This document shows, piece after piece, positions 23,750 to 53,525 of a DNA stretch of 64,000 bases (its first letter is position 1; each line of letters opens with the position of its first letter). The translations under genes and the position numbers were made by a program. The notes beneath the pieces were generated by a model. The model was not told the DNA's origin. It made no database searches and was given only the letters and a program-made list of their open reading frames with translations. The DNA lies in the sequence record NC_023719.1; one strand, given 5' to 3'.

Positions 23750-24073
23750 ATGTCATCTGTAATTTTTACAATGATGGGTTTCTTATTAGGGGCTCTAATA
23801 GCATTTGTAAAAGGAGGTGAAAAGAAAGGTAGAAGTAAACAGTTTGTTTGCGGACATTGTGAATCAAAGGATACTTTACGTATTCAAAAATTGAGAGATA
23901 GAGATGTTTTCACATGTACGTTTTGCGAAAGAATTATTGATGAAGCAACTGTAAAAATGATGCATAAAGAAGATTATGAAATATTGAAAAAACATCCTGA
24001 GCTATATGAAGAATTTAAACGCGCTAGATTGGAGGGAAGAACTTTTGAAATCCCAAGCAAAGAAAATCATTGA
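23750..24073 (+). CDS. Membrane-anchored zinc-ribbon protein
   Basis: N-terminal TM helix; CGHC...CTFC. Confidence 0.7.
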   Translation: MSSVIFTMMGFLLGALIAFVKGGEKKGRSKQFVCGHCESKDTLRIQKLRDRDVFTCTFCERIIDEATVKMMHKEDYEILKKHPELYEEFKRARLEGRTFEIPSKENH

Positions 24074-25301
24074 TATATTAGAACGAAAAGGTTATGAGGC
24101 GTATTTAATTGGCGGAGCAGTTAGAAATACGCTTCACAATTTCAAGTATGGAGAAGAATTACCAATTAAGGATTTTGACATCGTTACGAATGCATCATGC
24201 GAACAAGTGATGGAATTATTTGAGGATACTGAGGCTAGAGGAGTTCAATTCAATGTAGCTGTGGTAAAGTTAGATGGTTATGAATTTGAAGTAGCTCAGT
24301 ATCGTGGAGAGTCTTATCCTGAAGGTGGATCTCTTCGTCCTGATAAAGTATATCCTGTACAAACTTTAGAGGAAGATTTGAAACGAAGAGATTTCACTAT
24401 TAATGCAATCGCAATGGACAAAATGGATCTTATTAGAGATCCATTAGAAGGTTGTATTGATATAAGAAATAGATTGATTAGAGCGATTGGTGACCCAAAT
24501 GAAAGGTTTTCTGAAGACCCATTGAGAATGATTCGAGCCTTCAGATTTATGTCTCAATTAGATTATTATTTAGATAAGAAAACTAAATTTGGGATTAAAA
24601 ACAACCTTGGTCTATTAAAAAACATACCACATGAAAGAATGAAGGCAGAGATTGACAAGATGTTGCGTGGTCAAGCTGTAGGGGTAGCATTGTTGAATAT
24701 GAAAATGGTAGGTGTTCATAAACATACCTTTTTAAATTCAATAACAAGTCAACAAGTTCCAGTATTAGATGGTGTATTAACTTTATCATATGAGCTGCTC
24801 AACGATGTGATACATAAATTAGAAGAATATGATAGAGACCAACTAGACATTACGGAACTTTATTATTTGTTGTATTACTACACAAGTTATGATGAAGCTG
24901 AAAAGAGTTTAAAAGAATCAATGTTTTTAAATGAAAAAGAAATTGAAAGAGTTTTATTGTTATTGAAGTACAATAAGATTCTGTTATCTAAAGATAATTT
25001 AGATATTTTCAATTTAGTAAAAGAAATTGGTGAGCAACGAGGGTTATCATATTTAAAAGATATTATAGATTCATATCATAAACTTCATCGAATTAATTTA
25101 GATTACTTGCTTGAAAAGTCATTATTTAAGAGTCAGCTTCCTTATAATGGAAATGATATAGTGATGTATGGCGAAAAGTTAAATATTAAGCCGGGTAAAT
25201 GGGTAGGGCAAGTGTTAGATAAAATGCAATTATATGCTATATCTGAAGTGGAGTACGAAATAGAGACTATAATAGAAGAAATGGTTGGTGATGGGAAATG
25301 A
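24045..25301 (+). CDS. cca: Class II tRNA nucleotidyltransferase (CCA-adding family)
   Basis: YLIGGAVRN, KDFDIV, DLKRRDFTINAIA, EDPLRMIRAFRF; start moved to TTG 24045 after GGAGG. Confidence 0.9.
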   Translation: MKSQAKKIIDILERKGYEAYLIGGAVRNTLHNFKYGEELPIKDFDIVTNASCEQVMELFEDTEARGVQFNVAVVKLDGYEFEVAQYRGESYPEGGSLRPDKVYPVQTLEEDLKRRDFTINAIAMDKMDLIRDPLEGCIDIRNRLIRAIGDPNERFSEDPLRMIRAFRFMSQLDYYLDKKTKFGIKNNLGLLKNIPHERMKAEIDKMLRGQAVGVALLNMKMVGVHKHTFLNSITSQQVPVLDGVLTLSYELLNDVIHKLEEYDRDQLDITELYYLLYYYTSYDEAEKSLKESMFLNEKEIERVLLLLKYNKILLSKDNLDIFNLVKEIGEQRGLSYLKDIIDSYHKLHRINLDYLLEKSLFKSQLPYNGNDIVMYGEKLNIKPGKWVGQVLDKMQLYAISEVEYEIETIIEEMVGDGK

Positions 25302-25785: not shown

Positions 25786-26814
25786 ATGGCAGCAATAACT
25801 AGAAGAAGATGGGAAAAAGAAGAAGATGAGTCATTAGTAAACTTAGTATTAGAAAAAACAAAAAAAGGCGAAACACTTGATTATATTTTTGGATTAGCTT
25901 CCGCTAAATTAAATCGAACAATCTTAGCATGCAGCAACCGATGGTATGACCATTTTCATGATACTTACCAAGCTGAATTAGCAATTGTTAAACAAGGTAA
26001 TCCAACAACAAATGATTATTCTGGTCCGTGGACAGCTCATGATGAAGAACGTTTATTAGAAAACATGGTGTCATTTTTAATACAAGATTTAGGGGTAATT
26101 GATTCCCTTAAACGTAGTGCTCAAATTCTTAAACGTTCACTTCAATCTTGCTCAAATCGTTGGTATAATAACGTTTTGAAGAAAAACAAGTTGACAGTTG
26201 AAAATATGGTTGCACAAGGTAAAAAAGCAGCAGCTATGATAAAAGAAGAAAGTGAAGTCCAGGAAAAAGTACAAGATCCACAACAAAAAGAAAATCGTAC
26301 TTTCAAAAACCAACGTGGCTTATTAACACAAAAGCAGTTGGATGGTTGGTCTCCTGAAAAACGATTTGAATTTTATAAAATGATGCGATTAGCTGAAATT
26401 TGTGGCCACAATTTGGATGACATATTAGCTTTAGCAGCAGTCACTTACAATAAATCAAAATCGGAATGTGAAATGACTTGGGAAAACTATTTCAAGGATG
26501 ATGAAATTCTAAAGGCTATGTTTGAAAAAGAGCAAAATGAAAAAGCTGAAAACGAAGTCCGAGAAGAGCAATCCACAATGGAATTGGAAGATGTTATTCC
26601 TGAGGACTACACAATAAAAGTAGAAGAGGATTCTACTCAAAAAGAGGTAATTACAGAAGCTGTAATGAATCCAGAAGAAATTCTAGGTTTAGTTAAGAGC
26701 TTAATTGCGAGAAATAAAGAGCTTGAGGCAGAAGTTAAAGAGCTTCGTGGAATTAGAGTGAAGAAAGAAGAATATGAAGCTATTTTAGTTAAGATTCAAT
26801 CTTTAGTTAAGTAA
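25786..26814 (+). CDS. RsfA-like SANT/Myb-repeat transcriptional regulator
   Basis: W...ED..L...L.R....CSNRWY repeated twice plus a degenerate third copy; C-terminal coiled coil. Confidence 0.75.
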   Translation: MAAITRRRWEKEEDESLVNLVLEKTKKGETLDYIFGLASAKLNRTILACSNRWYDHFHDTYQAELAIVKQGNPTTNDYSGPWTAHDEERLLENMVSFLIQDLGVIDSLKRSAQILKRSLQSCSNRWYNNVLKKNKLTVENMVAQGKKAAAMIKEESEVQEKVQDPQQKENRTFKNQRGLLTQKQLDGWSPEKRFEFYKMMRLAEICGHNLDDILALAAVTYNKSKSECEMTWENYFKDDEILKAMFEKEQNEKAENEVREEQSTMELEDVIPEDYTIKVEEDSTQKEVITEAVMNPEEILGLVKSLIARNKELEAEVKELRGIRVKKEEYEAILVKIQSLVK

Positions 26815-32014: not shown

Positions 32015-32181
32015 TACAAAAAAAGAAACTAAAATTTAGTTTCTTTTTTTAATGTTTTGGTAACTCATAAATTAATTTATTAGTCTTAATCATATTAAAA
32101 GAAAAATAACAGTTTTATTTTTAAAAACAGTTTACAAAGTAATAGTTATATGATATAATAAATATATAAATAAGGAAAGGA

Positions 32182-32415
32182 TTGATGTTAATGTTGTATA
32201 CGAATACAAAAGAGGGTAAAGAGGTATTAGAAATATTAGAGCATGTGGTTTCTACAGATGGTATGGAAGTTTACAAATGTTCGTTATGTGATGAGTTATT
32301 TGGTGGTAGACCTAGTGAAGTAAAAGAAGAGAAGCCAATATGCGGTATTTGCGAAATGGAAATAAAAGCAGAAAATTATTTCCCAGGTGAGCATGAGGAT
32401 TACGAGGAAGATTAA
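32182..32415 (+). CDS. Small zinc-ribbon protein
   Basis: CSLC...CGIC. Confidence 0.7.
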   Translation: MMLMLYTNTKEGKEVLEILEHVVSTDGMEVYKCSLCDELFGGRPSEVKEEKPICGICEMEIKAENYFPGEHEDYEED

Positions 32416-32499
32416 TTTCTTCCTTTTTTATTTTTTAAAAAACTATTTACATAATTAAAACAATGTGATATAATAAATATATAAAGGATAAATAAGAAG

Positions 32500-33057
32500 G
32501 TGATTGTAGAAATGATTAATAGTATAAAAGCTTACTATTGGAGGAAAGTTAAAAAACTTAGTTGGTATGAAATTAGTAAAGAGAAAAAATTATCTATGTC
32601 TTTTATGAGTAGATTTATGTATCAATTAGATTGGGATGCTATAAGCGAATATCAAAAACTATCTGAAAAATCTATGAGAGAATTTGAAGATTTAGTTGAT
32701 TGGTTTGAAATTTCTAAACACCAGAATTTGTCTGAAAAATTTATAAGTAAATTTAAATATAAAGTGCTTTGGATGCTTATTTGCGAATATCAAGAATTAT
32801 CCGAAGATTTTATAAAAGAACATCTAGGATTTATTAATTGGCGGCATATTTGTAAATACCAATTGTTGTCTGAAGATTTTATAAGAAAATTCCAACATAG
32901 AGTTGATTGGGATTGTGTTAGTGCAAATCAATATCTTTCTAGAGATTTTATAATTGAATTTATAGATCAAATAGATATTATTCTTTTGAAACACAACGAT
33001 ACTTTAAGTGATGAATTAAAAGAAGAGATGATTTTATTAAAAAAATTAGTAGGTTAA
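32500..33057 (+). CDS. 23-aa tryptophan-repeat protein
   Basis: W..IS..Q.LSE.FIR.F...V repeats plus ELKEEM tail. Confidence 0.85.
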   Translation: MIVEMINSIKAYYWRKVKKLSWYEISKEKKLSMSFMSRFMYQLDWDAISEYQKLSEKSMREFEDLVDWFEISKHQNLSEKFISKFKYKVLWMLICEYQELSEDFIKEHLGFINWRHICKYQLLSEDFIRKFQHRVDWDCVSANQYLSRDFIIEFIDQIDIILLKHNDTLSDELKEEMILLKKLVG

Positions 33058-33192
33058 TTTGTTGTTAATTAAATCATTACTATTTATAATAATAGAATAT
33101 CTTAAAAATTAAACAAAAGGTGCTGCAGGAACTGAGAGAATTGTTCTTTACCATTTCCGTGAGTGTTAAATGAATTATCAGCCTTGTTTAAA

Positions 33193-33348
33193 TACCTGAA
33201 GCGGTAAAAGCAGTTACTTCGACATTATGAGTCCGTTGTCGGTGGTTCGAGTCCACCTCCCGCGACCATTTTAATTTATTAACTATTAACGCGGGATAGC
33301 TCAGTTGGTAGAGCACGTATATTACACTGTTTTAAATAATCTCAGGTA
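33193..33348 (+). ncRNA. yrlA: YrlA-like Y RNA (Y1) with circularly permuted tRNA module
   Basis: Conserved stem TGAAGCGG..AGCAGTTACTTC / CTGTTTT..ATCTCA enclosing T-arm, acceptor hairpin, then D-arm. Confidence 0.85.
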
Positions 33349-33523
33349 GTACATAAAGAGAAGAGAAATCTTCTCTTTTTTTATATTCTGTTAAAAAAGT
33401 TATTTACAAGTACTCAATTTTATGATATAATAAATATATAAGGATTAAATTTTATTAATTTATGTAATTTTCTTTATTTAATCTTATATTAAGTACTGAA
33501 TCAAAATTAAAAGGAGAGATAAG

Positions 33524-34354
33524 ATGAAAAAAAATTCAAGACTTAAGAGAATAAGTGTTTTTAATGATCAGTTAGAAAAAGTTTTGCAACTCGCTAAATT
33601 TAATGGAGTTGAAACTGAACAATATTCTAAATCTGAATCTACACCGATGTCAGAGTTGAAATTTCTTTTATCATTTCAAACAACAACTGACATACCTAAA
33701 CTAGTTATTGGTATGGAACAAGATATTATTGATACCATTAAAGAATCTCAAAATGTGTTTGATAATTTATTCAATGAAGTTAATATTAAAGCGTTAAGCG
33801 ATGAGTATGTAGATAGATATCCTGAAGGTTATTTATATAATTATTTTTCTGAAGAAGAAATTGAAGAATTTAAAAAACAATATGCCGATCAACAAGGTAT
33901 AGATTATCAAGTTTCCGAGCAGGTGGATAATGATGTAGATACTTTATTAATGTATTTTGATGCAATCCAAAGAGCTAATGATGATAAATTAAATGAAATC
34001 GTTAATTCAAAAGGATTTAGTGATGCGGTAATGGTTGTGGAACAAAAAGGTTTTAAAATTGATGAAATAATTAAAGAGTATAACTATAATTTTGATGAAT
34101 TCAGCAGACTTAAATCTAAAAATAAAACCATTGAAACTATTGAAAAAGCATATAATAAAGTTAAAAATGATGACTCTGATACGTACAATGCTCCTGAAAC
34201 AGATGATACGGATGAGTTAATAAGAGGAGCAGCTAAATTAGCATATGAAAAGTTAGGTGTTGATATAGACGGTTACAGATACGCATTTCAAAATGATCTT
34301 TCGGTTTCAAAAATACAAATTATTGATGAAAAAACGTTTAAAATTTCAATGTAA
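33524..34354 (+). CDS. Acidic hypothetical protein with N-terminal SRLKRIS motif
   Basis: AAGGAG RBS, terminator follows. Confidence 0.8.
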   Translation: MKKNSRLKRISVFNDQLEKVLQLAKFNGVETEQYSKSESTPMSELKFLLSFQTTTDIPKLVIGMEQDIIDTIKESQNVFDNLFNEVNIKALSDEYVDRYPEGYLYNYFSEEEIEEFKKQYADQQGIDYQVSEQVDNDVDTLLMYFDAIQRANDDKLNEIVNSKGFSDAVMVVEQKGFKIDEIIKEYNYNFDEFSRLKSKNKTIETIEKAYNKVKNDDSDTYNAPETDDTDELIRGAAKLAYEKLGVDIDGYRYAFQNDLSVSKIQIIDEKTFKISM

Positions 34355-34461
34355 CATAAAAATTAGAGAAGAGAAATCTTCTCTTTTTTTTTTAACTTTA
34401 CGAAATAAACTGTTTACATTATCAAACAATTGTTATATAATAAATATATAAATAATTAATC

Positions 34462-34594
34462 AAAACCGATTGATTGCTGGTTTTAATAAACCTTATACCC
34501 TGAGTAGTCTATCTACTAGAAACTACTTGAAAACTAAAACTCCCCACCGTGCCGTTGGGCTATTCTCCGAGTATGGGGTTAGAGGAGAATAGAA
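34462..34594 (+). ncRNA. Putative structured RNA behind an early promoter
   Basis: No ORF or RBS; GC-rich helices 34489-98 / 34573-82 and 34562-70 / 34586-94. Confidence 0.55.
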
Positions 34595-34664
34595 AATATT
34601 TAAAAAAAAATTAAAAATTTTGTTAAATAAATTCTAACTATTGATAATAATATATCATCTTAAT

Positions 34665-34757
34665 AATCATTTATGAAGCGGAAAGAACAGTTACTTCAAC
34701 TTTAATCCAAACTTGAAACCAAAACTATACTGTTTTTTAAAAAACTCATAAATGATT
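34665..34757 (+). ncRNA. Y-RNA-like module Y2
   Basis: TGAAGCGG-AAAG-AACAGTTACTTC...CTGTTTT..AACTCA in a 12-bp inverted repeat. Confidence 0.8.
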
Positions 34758-34857
34758 CAGTTTTTATCTGAAAGAACTAAAAATCATAAGTTCGCTTTCA
34801 TATAGTTTCTTATTACTTTGTATAAGAGGATAACTATATAAAGTTAAATGTAAATCA

Positions 34858-34967
34858 ATTTAATTATAATTAATGAAGCGGGAAAACAGCTACTTCGATG
34901 AAAATCTATTACACAATTAAAGCTTTTTAATCTGTTTTCACTTATCTCATTGATTTTATTTTAAATT
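34858..34967 (+). ncRNA. Y-RNA-like module Y3
   Basis: TGAAGCGG-GAA-AACAGCTACTTC...CTGTTTTC..ATCTCA. Confidence 0.8.
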
Positions 34968-35091
34968 ACTTATTAATTATTGATGCGGACGTAACAGTTA
35001 CTTCATACAAGATAATGGTATAACATGATTCCTCGCGCTCAACGGGGAAACTACACTGTTACAAATTATCTCAATAATTAATAAGTAATTT
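34963..35091 (+). ncRNA. Y-RNA-like module Y4
   Basis: TGATGCGG-ACGT-AACAGTTACTTC...CTGTTAC..ATCTCA; perfect 21-bp closing inverted repeat. Confidence 0.82.
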
Positions 35092-35097
35092 AAAGAA

Positions 35098-35176
35098 TCC
35101 TTGTTGAAGCGGTAATAACAGTTACTTCATACATTTGGCGTACACAAGCACTGTTATAAATAATCTCAACAATGGA
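35098..35176 (+). ncRNA. Y-RNA-like module Y5
   Basis: TGAAGCGG-TAAT-AACAGTTACTTC...CTGTTAT..ATCTCA. Confidence 0.82.
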
Positions 35177-35191
35177 GTTTAAAAATCAATG

Positions 35192-35361
35192 ATAACTTAA
35201 TACATATATTGATGCGGGATGAACAGTTACTTCTAATATATTGAGAATATTACAAATAATAGATTTAACTTTTTGCTAGATCCTTGGTTGGTTTTTTATC
35301 AATTTACACACGGTTTTTTACTTACTGTTTGTTAAAGATCTCAATATATGTATTAAGTTAT
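35192..35361 (+). ncRNA. Y-RNA-like module Y6
   Basis: TGATGCGG-GATG-AACAGTTACTTC...CTGTTT..ATCTCA; perfect closing repeat of about 21 bp; directly upstream of TROVE gene. Confidence 0.8.
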
Positions 35362-35413
35362 TATTTTTTTTTTGAACATAATAATGTACATAAAAACTAG
35401 GGGGAATAATCTA

Positions 35414-37045
35414 ATGAGTAAAATGTCTAAAAAAGTAAAAGAAACACGTAAAGCAGAAGTACTAAAACCAGTAGAGAACTTTATGGGTGGAATTTCTTAT
35501 GAACATAATCCATTACTAACTCTAAAAATGGTTAGCGCAAGTTCTATTTTTGGTGAACCCCAATACTATCGCTCAGGTGAATTTGCAGAAAAGAACGTAA
35601 GAGATGGTTCTTATCGTATTAATTCTGTATTATCTAAGTACGATATGCTTTTAGGTAAAACGTTTAATGATAAAAACACAAGTGAGATCATGGAAGAAGT
35701 GATTGATGCTGCTTTATCATATGATTTTGAAGGAACTTTACGATGGGCTGTAGAGCTACGTAAAGATTTCTATATGCGTTTAAATCCTCAAGTTATCATG
35801 GTACGCGCTGCGATGCATGAAGATCGTGCTGAATTTAACGAGAAAAACCCAGGTTTATTTGCTCAAATTCAAAAAGATGTTATGAGTCGTGCCGATGAAC
35901 CATCTAGCCAGTTAACTTATTGGTTACACAATAAGGGTTCTAAATCCGGTATTCCTAGTATCTTAAAACGTACTTGGAAGAATCGTTTAGAAAGCATGAC
36001 TCGTTATGAAGCTGCTAAGTACAAAAATGCAAATGTCGGAATGATTGACACTGCTCGTATTTCACATGCGAAAGGTGATTTAGTTGGAGAATTATTAACT
36101 ACTGGTACTATTGAGGTAGATGATTCTCAAAGCACATGGAATGTTTTACGTTCTAATGGCCAATCTTGGAAAGAGATTTTATCAACTATTCAATTACCAC
36201 ACATGGCATTATTACGTAATTTACGTGGTATCTTTGAAGAAGTTAATAACAAAGATCTATGTAAAGAACAAATGGATCAATTAAAAGCTGGCGTAGTAAG
36301 AGGAAAGCAGTTCCCATTCCGTTATTACCAAGCTTATAAAATGGTTTCTATTAGCTCTGTTAATCATAAGCAATTAATCATGGATACCCTTGAGGAATGT
36401 ATTGATATTGCTTTAGAAAACATGCCTAAATTGAAAGGTAAAACGGTAGTTTTAACTGACAATTCCGGTAGTGCACATGGAGCCTTTACTTCAGAATATG
36501 GAACAGTAAATGTAGCGCAAATTAACAATTTGTCTGCCGTATTAACTGCTAAGAATGCTGAAGATGGAGAAGTATACACATTTGGTGACCAACTCAAAGA
36601 AATTCCGATTTCTAAGAGAAATGGAGCTTTAATCCAAGCGAAAGAAGTTGATCGCGTTGGACAAACAGTAGGTATGGGTACCGAACATGGTGTATGGTTG
36701 TACTTGGATAAGATCATTCGCAATAAGATCCATGTGGATAACTTATTTATCTATAGCGATATGCAAGCTGGTCATGGCCGTTTATATGGTACTAACGCAA
36801 GCCAATATAGCAAATATATTGTTAATGGTCATTATATTGACGTATATAAGCTAATTGAGGAATATCGTTCAAAGGTGAATCCGAAAGTAAATGTTTTCAC
36901 TGTTCAAACTGCGGGTTATTCCAATGTGTTGATTCCAGAAGTGATGCATAGAGGTTCTGTTTTATATGGTTGGACTGGTAAAGAGACTGTCTATGCTGAA
37001 CAGATGATTAAGCTTTGGGAACAAGCAGAAATGAAAAAGCAATAA
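35414..37045 (+). CDS. rsr: Ro60/TROVE domain RNA-binding protein with C-terminal vWA domain
   Basis: N.MGG.SY, SS.FGEPQYY, R.DFYMRLNP, LPHMALLRNLRG, QFPFRYY.AY, vWA MIDAS-like LTDNSGS, IYSDMQ, GWT; start moved to ATG 35414. Confidence 0.92.
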   Translation: MSKMSKKVKETRKAEVLKPVENFMGGISYEHNPLLTLKMVSASSIFGEPQYYRSGEFAEKNVRDGSYRINSVLSKYDMLLGKTFNDKNTSEIMEEVIDAALSYDFEGTLRWAVELRKDFYMRLNPQVIMVRAAMHEDRAEFNEKNPGLFAQIQKDVMSRADEPSSQLTYWLHNKGSKSGIPSILKRTWKNRLESMTRYEAAKYKNANVGMIDTARISHAKGDLVGELLTTGTIEVDDSQSTWNVLRSNGQSWKEILSTIQLPHMALLRNLRGIFEEVNNKDLCKEQMDQLKAGVVRGKQFPFRYYQAYKMVSISSVNHKQLIMDTLEECIDIALENMPKLKGKTVVLTDNSGSAHGAFTSEYGTVNVAQINNLSAVLTAKNAEDGEVYTFGDQLKEIPISKRNGALIQAKEVDRVGQTVGMGTEHGVWLYLDKIIRNKIHVDNLFIYSDMQAGHGRLYGTNASQYSKYIVNGHYIDVYKLIEEYRSKVNPKVNVFTVQTAGYSNVLIPEVMHRGSVLYGWTGKETVYAEQMIKLWEQAEMKKQ

Positions 37046-37141
37046 AACCATGAAACCTTACAGATAAATTCTGTAAGGTTTTTATTTACAAATTTTTAGA
37101 TATATGATATAATATAAATATAAAGAAAAGGAGATGATTGT

Positions 37142-37534
37142 ATGAATTTCGTAGTCGGTCAAATTGTAGATACGAGTGAGGTATTAGATTTAATCAATAG
37201 AATTCATTACAATCAACAAGAGATAAATGAAAGTGATGATCTAGAAACTAGACTTTATGTTCATCAAAAATATGAAGTTGTAGAGTTGCTAGTATCGGAA
37301 CTAGAAGATTCTCCTTATTATTTAGATGATGATTTAGTGGATGAATATTTAAAAATGTCTCCCGAAACAATGCAACCTATTGTTTTCAATATATTTGAAG
37401 GTAGAAGGTTATTAGTAGATGGAGGTCATAGAATAGAAGTTGCTAAGTTATTAAAATTGGAAAAGATCAAAGGTTTTGTAGGTTATGATGAACCAGATTG
37501 GTCAGAATATAATGAAAAGTATGAAGATAGTTAA
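37142..37534 (+). CDS. ParB/Srx-like domain protein
   Basis: PIV......LLVDGGHR..VA..L. Confidence 0.75.
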   Translation: MNFVVGQIVDTSEVLDLINRIHYNQQEINESDDLETRLYVHQKYEVVELLVSELEDSPYYLDDDLVDEYLKMSPETMQPIVFNIFEGRRLLVDGGHRIEVAKLLKLEKIKGFVGYDEPDWSEYNEKYEDS

Positions 37535-37611
37535 AAAATCTGTTAATAATATCCACTCTATTAATAATAATATCTTTATCTTAAAAATAAGGCATCTTAG
37601 AAAAGGAGATA

Positions 37612-38118
37612 TTGTTCTTAGTGGATAATCAAATTAAAGCATTAAATGTTATGTTACAATATTTAGATTCTCTTAATAGTCTTAGTAAAAGTTCTTTAAG
37701 TTCTGATGCTTCAAAATTAGTAAATACTACAATTATTGAAGTAATTAATACATTAAATCGTGAAATAGGTATTAAAGATTCTAAAGCTGCTTTAGCTGAA
37801 GCACAACTTAAAGGATCACCTCTTAGTGGTAAAGCTTACACAAAAGATATTCCAAATGGAAAAACTTTTAAATTTAATGGTGGTTTTGAAGATCCAAAAC
37901 AAGAAGATTCTGATGATAAGAGAAATCTTTCTGACATTGCATCAGATATTCAAGATCAAAGTATAGATCTAATAACATCTCTTATTAAAGATGTAGCTAC
38001 TATTAATGGTGACATTAGTAAAATTAATACACAAAAGCTAAAAGAATTAGAAGAGGCTTTTATTAAAAAATTAAAAAAATTAGCAACACCGTTCGATATT
38101 TATGATAAAGAACAATAA
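37612..38118 (+). CDS. Hypothetical protein
   Basis: AAGGAG RBS; start may be 37621. Confidence 0.7.
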   Translation: MFLVDNQIKALNVMLQYLDSLNSLSKSSLSSDASKLVNTTIIEVINTLNREIGIKDSKAALAEAQLKGSPLSGKAYTKDIPNGKTFKFNGGFEDPKQEDSDDKRNLSDIASDIQDQSIDLITSLIKDVATINGDISKINTQKLKELEEAFIKKLKKLATPFDIYDKEQ

Positions 38119-38127
38119 TTAAAATAT

Positions 38128-39931: not shown

Positions 39932-40003
39932 GGTTCATTGGTCAAGTGGTAAAGACACCTTCCCTTACGGAAGGTAACATAGGTTCGACTCCTATATGGG
40001 CCG
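39932..40003 (+). tRNA. Glu/Asp-like tRNA body with aberrant anticodon loop (identity unresolved)
   Basis: Acceptor, D and T arms canonical; anticodon arm CCTTC-CCTTACG-GAAGG; CCA not encoded. Confidence 0.6.
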
Positions 40004-40059
40004 CCTAATATGTTGCAGAGATTAAGCTAATTGTAGCGCTGCAGCATTATTCTTAACGA

Positions 40060-40368
40060 GGGATTGTTAAGGATTCGACAGGGGAAAATAGTATAAGACA
40101 TGATACTCGTAAAGCATACGTTACATGCTAAGTTAAATATAACTAACAACGAATTACAAGTAGCCTAGTTAATAGGTGCCAAAACAATAGAGTTGCTCTA
40201 ACATCTATTTGAGGTTCAAAGATTTGAGCTATTTCTTACTTTAGAATAAAGTAAGTGGTGGAGCCTAGAGAAAACGCTGTAGAAACTAACTATTCAAATT
40301 GTAAATGGTATCAAACAAGTGTCTATATGAAAGTCTTCTGGACGCGGGTTCGACTCCCGCCAGTTCCA
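40060..40368 (+). ncRNA. ssrA: tmRNA; predicted tag (A)NNELQVA*
   Basis: 5' GGGATTGTTAAGGATTCGACAGGG; G3-U70; TAAATATAACT resume context; 3' GGACGCGGGTTCGACTCCCGCCAGTTCCA. Confidence 0.92.
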
Positions 40369-46862: not shown

Positions 46863-47936
46863 ATGTCATCATCTACTATCAGTAAAGTAACGCCAAATGA
46901 GTTTATTAATATCGTGGAGCCGCTTTATTCTTCAGGCGAACAAATTCCAACTATTATGTTGTGGGGACCTCCTGGGGTTGGTAAATCAGAAGCTATCCAA
47001 ACTACATTAGCAAAACGTATTGCTAAAAATACTGGTAAAACAGTTAAATTCACTGACGTTCGGTTACTATTATTCAACCCAGTTGATTTACGTGGTATCC
47101 CAGTACCTGACCAAGCGCATGAATTTACAAAATGGTTAAAGCCACAAATCTTCAACATGGATCCAGATCCAAATGTTGTTAACATCTTATTACTTGATGA
47201 AATTTCAGCTGCACCGCCTGCAGTACAAGCAGCGGCATTCCAATTAACACTTGACCGTAAAATCGGTGAGCATACATTACCAGATAATGTAATCATTATT
47301 GCAGCTGGTAACCGTGTAGTAGATAAAGGTGTTGCTTACAAAATGCCTACACCGTTGGCAAACCGTATGACTCACTTTGAAATCCATGCTGACCTAGAAG
47401 ACTGGAAAGAGTGGGCAATTCCAAATGGTATTCACCCAACAGTTATTGGTTTCTTAAACTTCCAAGGTAGCTACTTACACAAATTTGATCCATCGAAAGA
47501 TGACTTAGCGTTCCCTACACCACGTGCTTGGTCATTCGTTTCAAAATACTTAAAGCTTTATGGTAATGATATTGACCGTGCATATCCAATGATTGCTGGT
47601 ACAATTGGTACAGGTCCAGCGCATGAGTTTAAAGCATTTGCTAATACGTATGGTAAATTACCAGATATCAATCGCATTATGGATGGAGAAAAGATTGATG
47701 TTCCAAAATCTCCAGATATTTTATACGCTTTATCAGCTGCTCTTACTTACCGCATTCCAAAAGCAACAGATGAGCAAATCAAAAACATTGTACTATTCAC
47801 AATGGGTCTATCAAAAGAGTTCGCAGTATTAACAATGCGAGATATCTTACGCGTAGAAGGTGCTCAAAAGAAAATCATGACTCTTAAAGAGTGGACTCAG
47901 TGGGCAAAGGCTCATAAAGAGTTAATCGTAGGGTAA
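46863..47936 (+). CDS. MoxR-like AAA+ ATPase
   Basis: Walker A GPPGVGKS, DLRGIP, Walker B LLLDEI, AAGNR, PLANR, PTPRAW. Confidence 0.9.
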   Translation: MSSSTISKVTPNEFINIVEPLYSSGEQIPTIMLWGPPGVGKSEAIQTTLAKRIAKNTGKTVKFTDVRLLLFNPVDLRGIPVPDQAHEFTKWLKPQIFNMDPDPNVVNILLLDEISAAPPAVQAAAFQLTLDRKIGEHTLPDNVIIIAAGNRVVDKGVAYKMPTPLANRMTHFEIHADLEDWKEWAIPNGIHPTVIGFLNFQGSYLHKFDPSKDDLAFPTPRAWSFVSKYLKLYGNDIDRAYPMIAGTIGTGPAHEFKAFANTYGKLPDINRIMDGEKIDVPKSPDILYALSAALTYRIPKATDEQIKNIVLFTMGLSKEFAVLTMRDILRVEGAQKKIMTLKEWTQWAKAHKELIVG

Positions 47937-52340: not shown

Positions 52341-53525
52341 ATGAAAATGGCACTAAGTGTAGAAGATCGTTTAGTTAAAAGTAGGGTACAATTATTAATG
52401 CATTTTCCGTTCTTTGGGACTTTAGCATTACATTTACAGTTGCGAGAGCGAAAGGATATTCCAACAGCAGCTACTGATGGTCGTAGTTATTTCTTTAATC
52501 CTGATTGGTGTGGTCGTTTGGACGACAAAGAGCTTAATTTCTTAACAGCTCATGAAGTGTTACACCCAGCATTAGGACACCTTTGGAGACGCGGTGGACG
52601 TGACCCAATTATTTGGAACCATGCGGCAGATTATTGTATTAATGCAATGATTAAAGAATGTGATCCAGATGAGAAACATTTCAAAATGATTGTTGGTGGA
52701 CTTTATGACAAGAAATTTGAAGGTATGTTCTCAGAAGAAATCTATGACATCTTAATTAAAGATGAAGATTACGTTAAAAAAGCTCATGCTAATGCAGCTA
52801 ATGGTAATGGTGGGACAATTGATAGCCATGATGAGTGGGGTAAAGCTCAAGCTGGTGATGAAAATGGAGACACTAAAGGTAACACTCCTCAAGATTGGGA
52901 AGGCCGTACAATTCAAGCTGCTAAAGTAGCTGAAAATAATGAAAAAAATCGTGGTAAAATGCCAGGAGCGATTAAACGTTTAATTAAAGATTTGGTGGAG
53001 CCACAGAAGAACTGGAAAGAACTTCTAGCTGAGTTTGTACAACCAGAAATTAATGACTATGGTTGGAATCCTCCAAATCAGCATCATATTTGGCGAGATA
53101 TTTACTTACCAGACTTCAATGAAGAAGTAGATACAGTGAAGAACTTAGTATTTGCTATTGATACTTCAGGATCGATTGGTGAGCATGAAATTCGTACATT
53201 TATTTCTGAAATTATTGGATGTATGAATCAGTTTAGTGGAAAAGTAAAAGGTCACTTAGTATATTGCGATGCTCGCGTAGCAGCAGTATACGATTTAGAA
53301 GATACTGAGCATTCAACTCCAGCTGGTGGTGGGGGTACTGCATTCGAACCAGTATTCCAGTGGGTTGAAGAAAACTTGGAAGAATGTTCTGGAGTAGCAT
53401 ACTTAACAGATATGTATGCAAGCTTCGATTTCAAAATTCCAAATTATCCAGTATTGTGGGCATCTACTACTAAAAACATGGAAGCTCCATGGGGAACAAC
53501 AACTTACCTTGATGTAAGAATATAA
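52341..53525 (+). CDS. DUF2201-type metallopeptidase-like + vWA protein
   Basis: TAATDG, HEVLH, WN.AAD..IN, IDTSGSI, GGGGTAF.PVF, YLTD. Confidence 0.85.
   Translation: MKMALSVEDRLVKSRVQLLMHFPFFGTLALHLQLRERKDIPTAATDGRSYFFNPDWCGRLDDKELNFLTAHEVLHPALGHLWRRGGRDPIIWNHAADYCINAMIKECDPDEKHFKMIVGGLYDKKFEGMFSEEIYDILIKDEDYVKKAHANAANGNGGTIDSHDEWGKAQAGDENGDTKGNTPQDWEGRTIQAAKVAENNEKNRGKMPGAIKRLIKDLVEPQKNWKELLAEFVQPEINDYGWNPPNQHHIWRDIYLPDFNEEVDTVKNLVFAIDTSGSIGEHEIRTFISEIIGCMNQFSGKVKGHLVYCDARVAAVYDLEDTEHSTPAGGGGTAFEPVFQWVEENLEECSGVAYLTDMYASFDFKIPNYPVLWASTTKNMEAPWGTTTYLDVRI

What the first reader, a model, noticed from the sequence alone, without database searches (positions are those of the whole stretch)
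33193..33348. Circularly permuted tRNA inside Y1, including an internal ACCA
Seen: after the scaffold come a T-arm (GGTGG-TTCGAGT-CCACC, 33241-57), an acceptor 3' strand plus ACCA (TCCCGCG-ACCA, 33258-68), a 21-nt AT linker, the acceptor 5' strand (CGCGGGA, 33290-96) and a textbook D-arm (TAGCTCAGTTGGTAGAGC). This is a tRNA 3' half placed before a 5' half. Known: YrlA-class Y RNAs are tRNA mimics with this elbow. Inference: the retained ACCA looks like the junction of two adjacent tRNA genes, so this may be a recent capture. Cleavage of the linker would give a two-piece, chargeable tRNA-like end tethered to Ro60.
Basis: partly seen in the sequence, partly recalled or inferred. Interest (0 to 1): 0.72.

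Follow-up and report, generated by a model that had tools for sequence, protein, structure and literature searches.

The report
Phage G tRNA-mimic Y RNA
This is the tRNA-mimicking (YrlA-type) Y RNA of Bacillus phage G, next to the phage's Ro60 gene; its tRNA parts in swapped order are the known hallmark of that RNA family, and the one unusual detail is a built-in ACCA plus AT-rich spacer that probably lets RNase P cut it into two paired pieces.

Summary
Window 33193-33348 (Bacillus phage G) holds a T-arm, a 7-nt acceptor 3' strand, ACCA, a 21-nt A/T linker, the complementary acceptor 5' strand and a canonical D-arm, all inside a Y RNA 2.1 kb upstream of the phage Ro60 gene.

- **Permuted order:** T-arm before D-arm with a closed acceptor stem is the defining YrlA architecture, already described in print as "circularly permuted tRNAs". 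A 2025 paper credits Chen et al. 2014 with Y RNA-like RNAs in phage G.
- **Two-piece cleavage:** this has a direct precedent in Mycobacterium smegmatis YrlA, which is cut by RNase P and then receives CCA.
- **Recent capture:** I found no support. No phage G tRNA resembles either half.
- **Chargeability:** I found no support. There is no anticodon and no shared identity element.

Modestly new: among 79 YrlA-like RNAs beside related Ro60 genes, CCA sits exactly at tRNA positions 74-76 in 7 of 35 large-loop members, against 3 of 333 at other offsets. Phage G is the cleanest case.

Verdict: a member of a known kind with an interesting sub-feature. No RNA data were available, so processing is inferred.

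The parts
33062..33090 (+). Promoter-like site TTGTTA-17-TATAAT, putting the transcript start near 33097
   Evidence: Consensus scan, 10 of 12 matches. It is a consensus match only.
33193..33348 (+). Y1, the YrlA-type Y RNA: 5' and 3' ends pair, with the tRNA-like module inside
   Evidence: MFE fold -42.3 kcal/mol, z=-2.4. Rfam YrlA hit E=2e-5. Own CM R1 78 bits, though this sequence was in the seed.
33198..33220 (+). Presumed Ro60-binding 5' strand motif GAAGCGGTAAAAGCAGTTACTTC
   Evidence: The motif occurs 5 times by regex, plus a variant at about 34874, upstream of Ro60 in phage G. It also occurs in the Y arrays of the closest relatives and, as GATGCAGT..CAGTTACTTC, in distant ones.
33231..33240 (+). 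Anticodon-stem 3' strand equivalent (33231-35) and 5-nt variable loop UUGUC (33236-40, C48 opposite G15)
   Evidence: Read from the sequence. ARAGORN accepts the re-permuted halves as a tRNA.
33241..33257 (+). T-arm GGTGG-TTCGAGT-CCACC
   Evidence: A natural variant C33256T keeps the pair as G-U.
33258..33264 (+). Acceptor 3' strand TCCCGCG (tRNA positions 66-72)
   Evidence: Pair probabilities 0.87-1.00 with 33290-96.
33265..33268 (+). Encoded discriminator A73 plus CCA
   Evidence: It is 96% unpaired. At family level, CCA is enriched at exactly this offset, 7 of 35 against 3 of 333.
33269..33289 (+). 21-nt A/T linker. TATTAAC occurs twice in tandem (33277-83 and 33284-90). Predicted RNase P cut between 33289 and 33290.
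   Evidence: A soil-metagenome strain lacks 7 nt at 33277. The cleavage site is inferred from the M. smegmatis precedent.
33290..33296 (+). Acceptor 5' strand CGCGGGA (tRNA positions 1-7)
33297..33320 (+). U8 A9, D-arm GCTC-AGTTGGTA-GAGC, A26 and the anticodon-stem 5' strand equivalent CGTAT
33326..33348 (+). 3' strand of the Ro60-binding or closing stem (CACTGTTTTAAATAATCTCAGGT)
   Evidence: It pairs with 33193-33214 in the MFE. The 3' element ..CTGT..ATCTCA is repeated in Y2-Y6.
33355..33385 (+). Intrinsic terminator, a 10-bp stem followed by a T run
34670..35352 (+). Array of five further Y-like RNAs (about 34670-34752, 34870-34953, 34977-35078, 35099-35175, 35203-35352), none with a tRNA-like module
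   Evidence: Shared 5' motif and closing stems read from the sequence. CM R1 finds no other non-tRNA hit in the window.
35414..37045 (+). Ro60/TROVE homologue gp540
   Evidence: Record annotation. Pfam TROVE is weak. PHROG 850 'RNA-binding protein' 1.3e-66. The family profile hits PDB TROVE proteins at 9e-12.
24006..25301 (+). Phage-encoded class II nucleotidyltransferase (CCA-adding enzyme / poly(A) polymerase family)
   Evidence: Pfam PolyA_pol 3.4e-25 plus PolyA_pol_RNAbd. A homologous gene lies 2 kb upstream of Ro60 in relative L087.

Best explanation
Window 33193-33348 is the YrlA-type Y RNA of Bacillus phage G. It is transcribed from its own promoter and terminator, 2.1 kb upstream of the phage Ro60 gene and on the same strand. 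Its paired ends carry the clade's Ro60-binding motif. Its interior is the family's tRNA-like module: variable loop, T-arm, acceptor stem, D-arm and a short anticodon-stem equivalent. This is why the tRNA halves appear in permuted order. Phage G's copy belongs to a minority subclass whose acceptor stem is tRNA-sized (7 bp) and is followed by an unpaired discriminator, an encoded CCA and an unstructured A/U spacer. In other words, it looks like a pre-tRNA 3' end joined to a pre-tRNA 5' leader. Inferred mechanism: host RNase P recognises the acceptor/T-arm stack and elbow and cuts between A33289 and C33290. Then 3'-to-5' exonucleases (RNase PH, RNase R or YhaM in Bacillus) trim the 21-nt trailer back to A33268. 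RNase Z is not expected to act, because the CCA is encoded. The host or phage CCA-adding enzyme can repair the end. The result would be a 76-nt piece and a 59-nt piece, held together by the acceptor stem, the anticodon-stem equivalent and the Ro60-binding stems. This two-piece RNA would present a tRNA-like elbow and a free CCA end while bound to Ro60. Shown here: sequence anatomy, family membership by architecture, and the CCA positional enrichment. Inferred: Ro60 binding, cleavage, trimming and whatever uses the CCA end.
For: The anatomy was verified. Rfam YrlA aligns the T-arm, acceptor stem and D-arm at E=2e-5. The Ro60 homologue lies 2.1 kb downstream on the same strand. I found 79 distinct homologous tRNA-like modules beside related Ro60 genes. 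In the hits of the metagenome scan alone (alignment A4, 49 distinct rows), 95% of cells are paired, all 7 acceptor pairs show compensatory changes, and the covariation score is 0.80 against 0.20 shuffled. CCA lies at offset 1 after the 7-bp stem in 7 of 35 loops of 8 nt or more, against 3 of 333 at other offsets. The shuffle mean is 0.47 and 0 of 20000 shuffles reach 7. In two likely orthologues, L016:8194 and L149:6123, the loop CCCAT(T/C)TATG is kept while the T, acceptor and D stems changed with compensation. In the four loci other than phage G where the CCA-type carries the Ro motif (L016, L068, L149, L167), a closed-loop YrlA paralogue lies nearby. The only two differences in a natural strain over 401 nt are a pair-preserving C>T in the T stem and a 7-nt indel in the linker. 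The two pieces cofold at -45.5 kcal/mol, against -23 for the pieces folded apart. For precedent, M. smegmatis YrlA with a 7-bp stem is cut by RNase P in vivo and in vitro and gains CCA, and both halves co-precipitate with Rsr (PMC4201824). In B. subtilis, RNase Z handles CCA-less precursors and RNase PH, RNase R and YhaM handle CCA-containing ones (PMC1935012). A phage nucleotidyltransferase of the CCA-adding family lies at 24006-25301.
Against: No RNA data exist for phage G in the runs served, so expression, ends and cleavage are untested. The Rfam score of 36.2 bits is below the YrlA gathering score of 69. The canonical GNCGAA Ro-binding motif is absent and is replaced by a clade-specific motif. 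The orthologue L014:8358 has CCG instead of CCA, so CCA is not strictly conserved. Two of the seven CCA cases lack a recognisable Ro motif, and two others are orthologues, so there are only about four independent Y-RNA lineages. In the short-linker relatives the discriminator can pair with the base before the 5' strand. That gives an 8-bp closed stem, which would be a poor RNase P substrate. Encoded CCA is nearly as common at true tRNA junctions in these genomes (25 of 84), so a relic of origin cannot be excluded. The alignments were fitted to my own model.
Confidence: 0.6

Rival explanations
1. Y1 is a YrlA that stays uncut. The 25-nt ACCA-plus-linker segment is simply a large, tolerated acceptor loop, and the CCA is a neutral leftover or a contact for some loop-binding factor.
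For: Most YrlAs are closed-loop and are not RNase P substrates. Of the family members found here, 44 of 79 have loops of 7 nt or fewer, often GNRA-like. The L014 orthologue has CCG. The linker tolerates a 7-nt indel, which also fits a functionless loop.
Against: CCA is enriched at exactly positions 74-76. The stem is exactly 7 bp with an unpaired A73 and an unstructured A/U spacer, which are the determinants that made M. smegmatis YrlA an RNase P substrate.
Confidence: 0.28
2. Recent capture: Y1's tRNA module was created recently in the phage G lineage from two adjacent copies of one tRNA gene. The ACCA and spacer would then be the unaltered intergenic junction.
For: The ACCA followed by an A/T spacer looks like phage G's own tRNA junctions, for example Asn-Gln ..GCCAtattaaTGCC... 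The closest Ro60 relatives (58-63% identity) have Y-RNA arrays without any tRNA-like module within 4-6 kb. Y1 sits apart from the array with its own promoter and terminator. The published dimeric-tRNA origin model supports the idea in general.
Against: The 3' half matches nothing else in the phage G genome, and the 5' half matches only one other place. None of the 10 tRNAs in the window is close, with local scores of 17 or less out of 31-40. The best outside matches are generic tRNA arms. Y1 carries the T-loop TTCGAG (53% of YrlA-like RNAs, 23% of tRNAs) and the D-arm TAGCTCA..AGAGC (56% against 14%) typical of the family. Host tRNAs could not be examined.
Confidence: 0.08
3. After opening, the CCA end is aminoacylated, as in tmRNA or viral tRNA-like structures, and the charged end is functional.
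For: There is a complete tRNA core, a 7-bp stem and A73-CCA. Chen et al. raised the possibility for M. smegmatis YrlA.
Against: There is no anticodon loop, no G3:U70 (Ala), no long variable arm (Ser) and no G-1 (His). Discriminators and acceptor sequences differ among the CCA-bearing relatives (A, C, C, C, G), so no common identity set exists. No experimental evidence exists anywhere for a charged YrlA.
Confidence: 0.05

Closest known systems
[quoted passage not shown] 2014, PMC4201824; Wang et al. 2018, bioRxiv 10.1101/312249)
   Same: It is encoded within 4 kb of a Ro60 gene on the same strand. The ends pair to form a Ro60-binding module. The interior has a T-arm 5' of an acceptor-like stem-loop 5' of a D-arm, with the conserved elbow nucleotides. 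The Rfam consensus aligns over model positions 23-86. Phage members are known, and phage G itself is cited as one (PMC12135203).
   Different: It scores below the Rfam gathering threshold (36 against 69 bits). The Ro-binding 5' motif is GAAGCGG..CAGTTACTTC rather than GNCGAA. The acceptor loop is 25 nt (ACCA plus a 21-nt A/U spacer) instead of about 3 nt.
Mycobacterium smegmatis YrlA, the processed form
   Same: It has a 7-bp acceptor stem. Its predicted piece sizes are similar (76 and 59 nt here, 82 and 65 nt there). RNase P cleavage followed by 3' trimming gives a tRNA-like CCA end while both halves stay bound to Rsr.
   Different: In M. smegmatis the terminal CA is added after cleavage. Phage G encodes the full ACCA and a long A/U spacer. 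Processing of the phage RNA is untested.
Circularly permuted (two-piece) tmRNA genes of alpha-proteobacteria and cyanobacteria (from my own knowledge, not checked here)
   Same: A tRNA-like domain is encoded with the acceptor 3' strand upstream of the 5' strand. An intervening segment is removed to give two base-paired pieces with a free CCA end.
   Different: tmRNA is alanylated (G3:U70) and acts on ribosomes with SmpB. Y1 has no such identity element and no tag reading frame, and it sits in a Ro60 context. Phage G's own tmRNA (40060-40368) is one-piece.
Permuted tRNA genes of Cyanidioschyzon merolae and some archaea
   Same: The 3' half is encoded before the 5' half, and the acceptor stem is initially closed by a loop that RNase P or RNase Z opens (discussed).
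   Different: Those precursors are circularised at a bulge-helix-bulge motif to restore an anticodon loop, giving functional tRNAs. Y1 has no anticodon loop and no such motif, and its ends continue into a Ro60-binding stem.
Tandem tRNA gene junction (a known false positive for YrlA searches)
   Same: It has a T-arm, acceptor 3' strand, NCCA, A/T spacer, acceptor 5' strand and D-arm in that order.
   Different: At real junctions the two acceptor strands belong to different tRNAs and are not complementary, and full tRNAs flank them. Here the strands pair perfectly and no flanking tRNA bodies exist.

Membership tests
YrlA-type bacterial/phage Y RNA | Encoded within about 4 kb of a Ro60/TROVE gene on the same strand | tested here: met
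   Y1 is at 33193-33348 (+) and gp540 at 35414-37045 (+), 2.07 kb apart.
YrlA-type bacterial/phage Y RNA | tRNA-like module ordered variable loop, T-arm, acceptor-like stem-loop, D-arm, with conserved elbow nucleotides | tested here: met
   Rfam YrlA alignment at E=2e-5, MFE fold, and ARAGORN accepting the re-permuted halves.
YrlA-type bacterial/phage Y RNA | Reaches Rfam RF02553 gathering score (69 bits) | tested here: not met
   The score is 36.2 bits, and only model positions 23-86 of 114 align. The Ro-binding stem is divergent and the 27-nt loop insertion is penalised.
YrlA-type bacterial/phage Y RNA | 5'/3' terminal stem with the conserved Ro60-binding 5' motif (GNCGAAN0-1G in Chen et al. 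2014) | tested here: inconclusive
   The terminal stem is present. The literal GNCGAA motif is absent from Y1. A clade-specific 5' motif is conserved in all six phage G Y RNAs and in relatives.
YrlA-type bacterial/phage Y RNA | Bound by Ro60/Rsr; carries tRNA modifications (pseudouridine 55, dihydrouridine) | not testable with these tools
   This needs immunoprecipitation and modification mapping.
RNase P-processed YrlA (M. smegmatis type) | Seven-base-pair acceptor stem | tested here: met
   TCCCGCG pairs with CGCGGGA, with pair probabilities 0.87-1.00. A73 is opposite A33289 and cannot pair.
RNase P-processed YrlA (M. smegmatis type) | Cleaved by RNase P at the 5' side of acceptor position 1, with the 3' end of the upstream piece ending in CCA | not testable with these tools
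   No RNA runs of phage G were found. The CCA is encoded at 33266-68.
Functional permuted tRNA gene | Anticodon stem-loop restored after processing; the product decodes | tested here: not met
   No anticodon loop exists. The anticodon-stem equivalent (33231-35 / 33316-20) continues into the Ro-binding stem. ARAGORN and the Rfam tRNA model find nothing on the native sequence.
Tandem tRNA gene junction | Complete tRNA genes on both sides of the junction | tested here: not met
   No tRNA is predicted in 32016-38127.

The most novel reading that the evidence does not exclude
CCA-encoding YrlAs (phage G Y1, L016:8194, L149:6123, L167:2451, L068:7819) form a distinct functional subclass that usually coexists with a closed-loop YrlA paralogue. 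Their acceptor loop would be opened by RNase P so that Ro60 carries a two-piece RNA with a genuine free tRNA 3' end. That end would then be used. It could be bound or repaired by the phage CCA-adding enzyme, charged, or offered as a decoy or sensor for host factors and toxins that act on tRNA acceptor ends. This would link phage Ro60 particles to tRNA-end surveillance during infection.
Probability: 0.12. Interest if true: 0.75.

Novelty: new member of a known kind. Interest (0 to 1): 0.35.

Why it matters
The effector side of bacterial and phage Y RNAs is still unexplained. YrlAs mimic tRNA closely, yet no partner for the tRNA-like module is known, and only one species (M. smegmatis) has been shown to open the acceptor stem. 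Phage G's copy is the most pre-tRNA-like example seen here, with 7 bp, an unpaired A73, an encoded CCA and a 14-21 nt A/U spacer. The positional enrichment of CCA across related phage loci suggests that opening the acceptor stem is a recurrent, selected option rather than a mycobacterial oddity. That gives a tractable phage-host pair in which to test whether a free CCA end matters for Ro60 function. It also offers an intermediate-looking form relevant to the published dimeric-tRNA origin model. It does not change the picture of what YrlA RNAs are.

Tried and rejected
- **Rfam at gathering thresholds:** nothing at Y1. Only the relaxed scan found YrlA.
- **RNA evidence:** two run searches found no phage G RNA library, only DNA metagenomes and weak RNA holders. 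The single read-laying run therefore went to natural DNA variants and says nothing about cleavage.
- **Supplementary tables of Chen et al. 2014:** not held, so I could not see how phage G's RNA was listed. The reviews PMC6047535 and PMC10870794 were also not held.
- **Closest Ro60 relatives:** I expected orthologues of Y1. I found only Y arrays without a tRNA module, so no close-range conservation test of ACCA was possible.
- **Donor search:** BLAST of each half against all phage records and against the window's tRNAs found no donor. Host tRNAs could not be searched because the one genome-contig scan went to Ro60 relatives.
- **First regex parsing of CM hits:** it mis-registered several arms and was replaced by column-based parsing.
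- **Rejected readings:** a real tRNA gene, a tandem tRNA junction, a functional permuted tRNA gene, and a CRISPR repeat (the 18.8-bit Rfam hit at 33147-81 is chance, E=9.6).
- **Precursor fold 33096-33386:** it pairs the leader with Y1's 5' strand and part of the D-arm. I did not pursue this.

Full report
**Identity of the window.** The window is Bacillus phage G (JN638751 / NC_023719, 100% identity; window coordinate + 372000 = record coordinate). In the record, the stretch 33058-33523 is unannotated. It lies between gp538 and gp539, with gp540 ("putative TROVE domain ribonucleoprotein") at window 35414-37045.

**Observation.**
- T-arm 33241-57
- acceptor 3' strand 33258-64
- ACCA 33265-68
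- a 21-nt linker 33269-89 that is 20/21 A/T
- acceptor 5' strand 33290-96
- D-arm 33297-33314

Around these lie a 5-nt variable loop (33236-40) and a 4/5-paired anticodon-stem equivalent (33231-35 with 33316-20). All the usual tRNA core nucleotides are present. The MFE fold of 33193-33348 reproduces the T-arm, acceptor stem, D-arm and two closing stems. Acceptor pairs have probability 0.87-1.00, ACCA is 96% unpaired and the linker is 69% unpaired.

When 33290-33320, any 7-nt loop and 33231-33268 are joined in silico, ARAGORN calls a canonical 76-nt tRNA. On the native sequence, neither ARAGORN nor Rfam's tRNA model reports anything.

**What it is.** With relaxed thresholds, the only meaningful Rfam match in 32500-36500 is YrlA (RF02553) at 33233-33319: 36.2 bits, E=2e-5, model positions 23-86. 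The consensus structure line of that family reads anticodon-like stem, variable loop, T-arm, acceptor stem closed by a roughly 3-nt loop, then D-arm. The phage G RNA differs by a 27-nt insertion in the acceptor loop.

The 5' part of Y1 carries GAAGCGGTAAAAGCAGTTACTTC. This motif recurs upstream of gp540 in five more Y-like RNAs with paired ends (about 34670-35352). It also recurs, slightly varied, in front of every tRNA-like module found in related loci.

gp540 is a Ro60/TROVE homologue. The evidence is a weak Pfam TROVE hit, PHROG 850 at 1.3e-66, and its family profile hitting PDB TROVE proteins at 9e-12.

A promoter-like site (33062-33090) and an intrinsic terminator (33355-33385) bracket Y1.

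**Literature.**
- Chen et al. 2014 (PMC4201824) defined YrlAs as tRNA mimics near Ro60 in 254 bacteria and 22 phages.
- The same paper showed that M. smegmatis YrlA, the one with a 7-bp acceptor stem, is cut by RNase P in vitro and in vivo. Its 5' half gains CA to end in CCA, and both halves co-precipitate with Rsr.
- Wang et al. 2018 (bioRxiv 10.1101/312249) solved the tRNA-like domain. [quoted passage not shown]
- A 2025 paper (PMC12135203) states that Chen et al. had already identified Y RNA-like RNAs in Bacillus phage G.

So the topology, the origin idea and the two-piece idea are all in print. The supplementary table that would show how phage G was listed is not held.

**Comparative analysis.** Using an alignment of gp540 relatives, I fetched 240 loci from viral, metagenome and genome collections. 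I searched them with a covariance model of the tRNA-like module.

I removed rows overlapping ARAGORN tRNAs (true tandem-tRNA junctions) and required at least 6 of 7 acceptor pairs. That left 79 distinct modules.

The structure is strongly supported. In the hits of the metagenome scan alone (alignment A4, 49 distinct rows), 95% of cells are paired, all seven acceptor pairs show double changes, and the covariation score is 0.80 against 0.20 in shuffles and 0.14 or less when slid. The caveat is that the alignment was fitted to my own model.

Forty-four modules have acceptor loops of 7 nt or fewer, often GNRA-like. Thirty-five have loops of 8 nt or more. In those 35, CCA occurs at offset 1 after the 7-bp stem, which is tRNA positions 74-76, seven times. 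At all other offsets it occurs 3 times in 333. Shuffling each loop gives a mean of 0.47, and no shuffle out of 20000 reaches 7.

Five of the seven carry the Ro motif: phage G, L016:8194, L149:6123, L167:2451 and L068:7819. Two do not: L010:8173 and L149:2553.

L016:8194 and L149:6123 look like orthologues. Their loop CCCAT(T/C)TATG is conserved although the T, acceptor and D stems have diverged with compensation. A third orthologue, L014:8358, has CCG instead.

In the four loci other than phage G where the CCA-type carries the Ro motif (L016, L068, L149, L167), a closed-loop YrlA sits nearby.

Phage G is the cleanest case, with exactly 7 bp, an unpaired A73, CCA, and the longest unstructured spacer among those with a Ro motif.

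**Natural variation.** A soil-metagenome contig spans 33050-33450 and differs at only two places:
- C33256T turns a T-stem G-C pair into G-U.
- Seven nucleotides are missing at 33277.

By reading, the reference has TATTAAC twice in tandem (33277-83 and 33284-90), so this is a slippage indel that changes the spacer between 21 and 14 nt. The stems and ACCA are untouched. The sample is too close to say more.

**Recent capture.** I found no donor.
- The 3' half (33229-68) matches only itself in the phage G genome. Its best outside matches are generic tRNA arms, for example 93.5% over 31 nt to a Vibrio phage tRNA-Met.
- The 5' half has one other place in phage G and otherwise generic D-arm matches.
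- None of the window's ten tRNAs is close.
- Y1 has the T-loop TTCGAG (53% of YrlA-like modules, 23% of 596 tRNAs from the same loci) and the D-arm TAGCTCA..AGAGC (56% against 14%). This favours family descent only mildly, because my model was seeded with such sequences.

- The closest Ro60 relatives (58-63% identity, several in Bacillus genomes) have Y arrays but no tRNA-like module within 4-6 kb.
- Y1's ACCA-plus-A/T junction resembles phage G's own tRNA junctions.
- Encoded CCA is about as frequent at real tRNA junctions in these genomes (25 of 84).

Host tRNAs could not be checked. I rate recent capture as unsupported but not excluded.

**Mechanism.** The acceptor stem plus T-arm, the intact elbow, the unpaired A73-CCA and a single-stranded leader are the features RNase P uses. 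They match the only YrlA known to be cleaved.

In Bacillus, RNase Z processes CCA-less precursors, whereas CCA-containing ones are trimmed by RNase PH, RNase R and YhaM (PMC1935012). The expected route is therefore an RNase P cut at 33289/33290 followed by exonucleolytic trimming to 33268, not RNase Z.

The resulting 76-nt and 59-nt pieces cofold at -45.5 kcal/mol, against -23 kcal/mol for the pieces folded apart, so they should stay together on Ro60.

Phage G encodes a CCA-adding-family nucleotidyltransferase at 24006-25301. Several of its tRNA genes lack encoded CCA, so CCA repair activity is expected in infected cells.

Chargeability is not supported. There is no anticodon, no G3:U70, no long variable arm and no G-1, and the acceptor stems and discriminators differ among the CCA-bearing relatives.

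**Verdict.** This is a correct observation of a known architecture in a phage where such an RNA has already been reported. The encoded ACCA and A/U spacer, and their recurrence at positions 73-76 in a minority of related phage YrlAs, are a modest new comparative result. They make RNase P opening of the acceptor stem a testable prediction. Everything about processing and function remains inference.

Noticed in passing
window 34670-35352: Five further Y-like RNAs lie in tandem directly upstream of the Ro60 gene. Each has the 5' motif GA(A/T)GCGG..ACAG(T/C)TACTTC and a closing stem, and none has a tRNA-like module. The last one (35203-35352) is about 150 nt with an uncharacterised interior. Six Y RNAs for one Ro60 is an unusually large set.
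   Followed up: partly
window 34449-34600: This is a G+C-richer stretch between a strong promoter-like site (34413-34441) and the Y array. It has nested complementary segments (CCCCA..TGGGG, ATTCTCC..GGAGAAT), which suggests another structured RNA. There was no Rfam hit at E<=10.
   Followed up: no
window 33355-33431 and 34365-34441: Nearly the same terminator hairpin (AGAGAAGAGAAATCTTCTCT) and the same promoter-like module (TTTACA-17-TATAAT followed by AAATATATAA) occur twice, once after Y1 and once after gp539. This looks like a duplicated regulatory cassette.
   Followed up: no
window 39932-40005 and 40060-40368: A tRNA with anticodon UUA, which would read the UAA stop codon and is annotated 'tRNA-other', sits 5 nt after a tRNA-Met and just before a one-piece phage tmRNA (tag AKLNITNNELQVA).
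   Followed up: no
window 24006-25301 and 25786-26814; L087 2817-4088: A CCA-adding/poly(A) polymerase family gene and a Myb-like DNA-binding gene lie about 8 kb upstream of Y1. A relative's locus has the nucleotidyltransferase 2 kb upstream of its Ro60 and a Myb-like gene nearby, which hints at a conserved RNA-maintenance block.
   Followed up: partly
L082, L083, L085, L087, L089 (upstream of each Ro60 gene): The closest Ro60 relatives, several in Bacillus genome assemblies, carry 1-4 Y-like RNAs with the same 5' motif but no tRNA-like module within 6 kb. Phage G is therefore the only member of its near clade seen here with a YrlA-type RNA.
   Followed up: partly
window 33098-33192: The predicted 5' leader of the Y1 transcript is extensively complementary to Y1's own 5' strand and part of the D-arm in the precursor fold (z=-3.8). 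This could be an alternative precursor structure or could be chance.
   Followed up: no
L149:2553-2662 and L010:8173-8250: Two tRNA-like modules have a T-arm, a 7-bp acceptor stem, NCCA, a spacer and a D-arm, but no recognisable Ro-binding motif. One has a 41-nt spacer containing its own hairpin. What they are is unclear.
   Followed up: no
window 52341-53525 and 46863-47936: A DUF2201 metallopeptidase/VWA-like protein and an AAA_3 (MoxR-like) ATPase lie a few kb apart downstream of the tRNA island.
   Followed up: no
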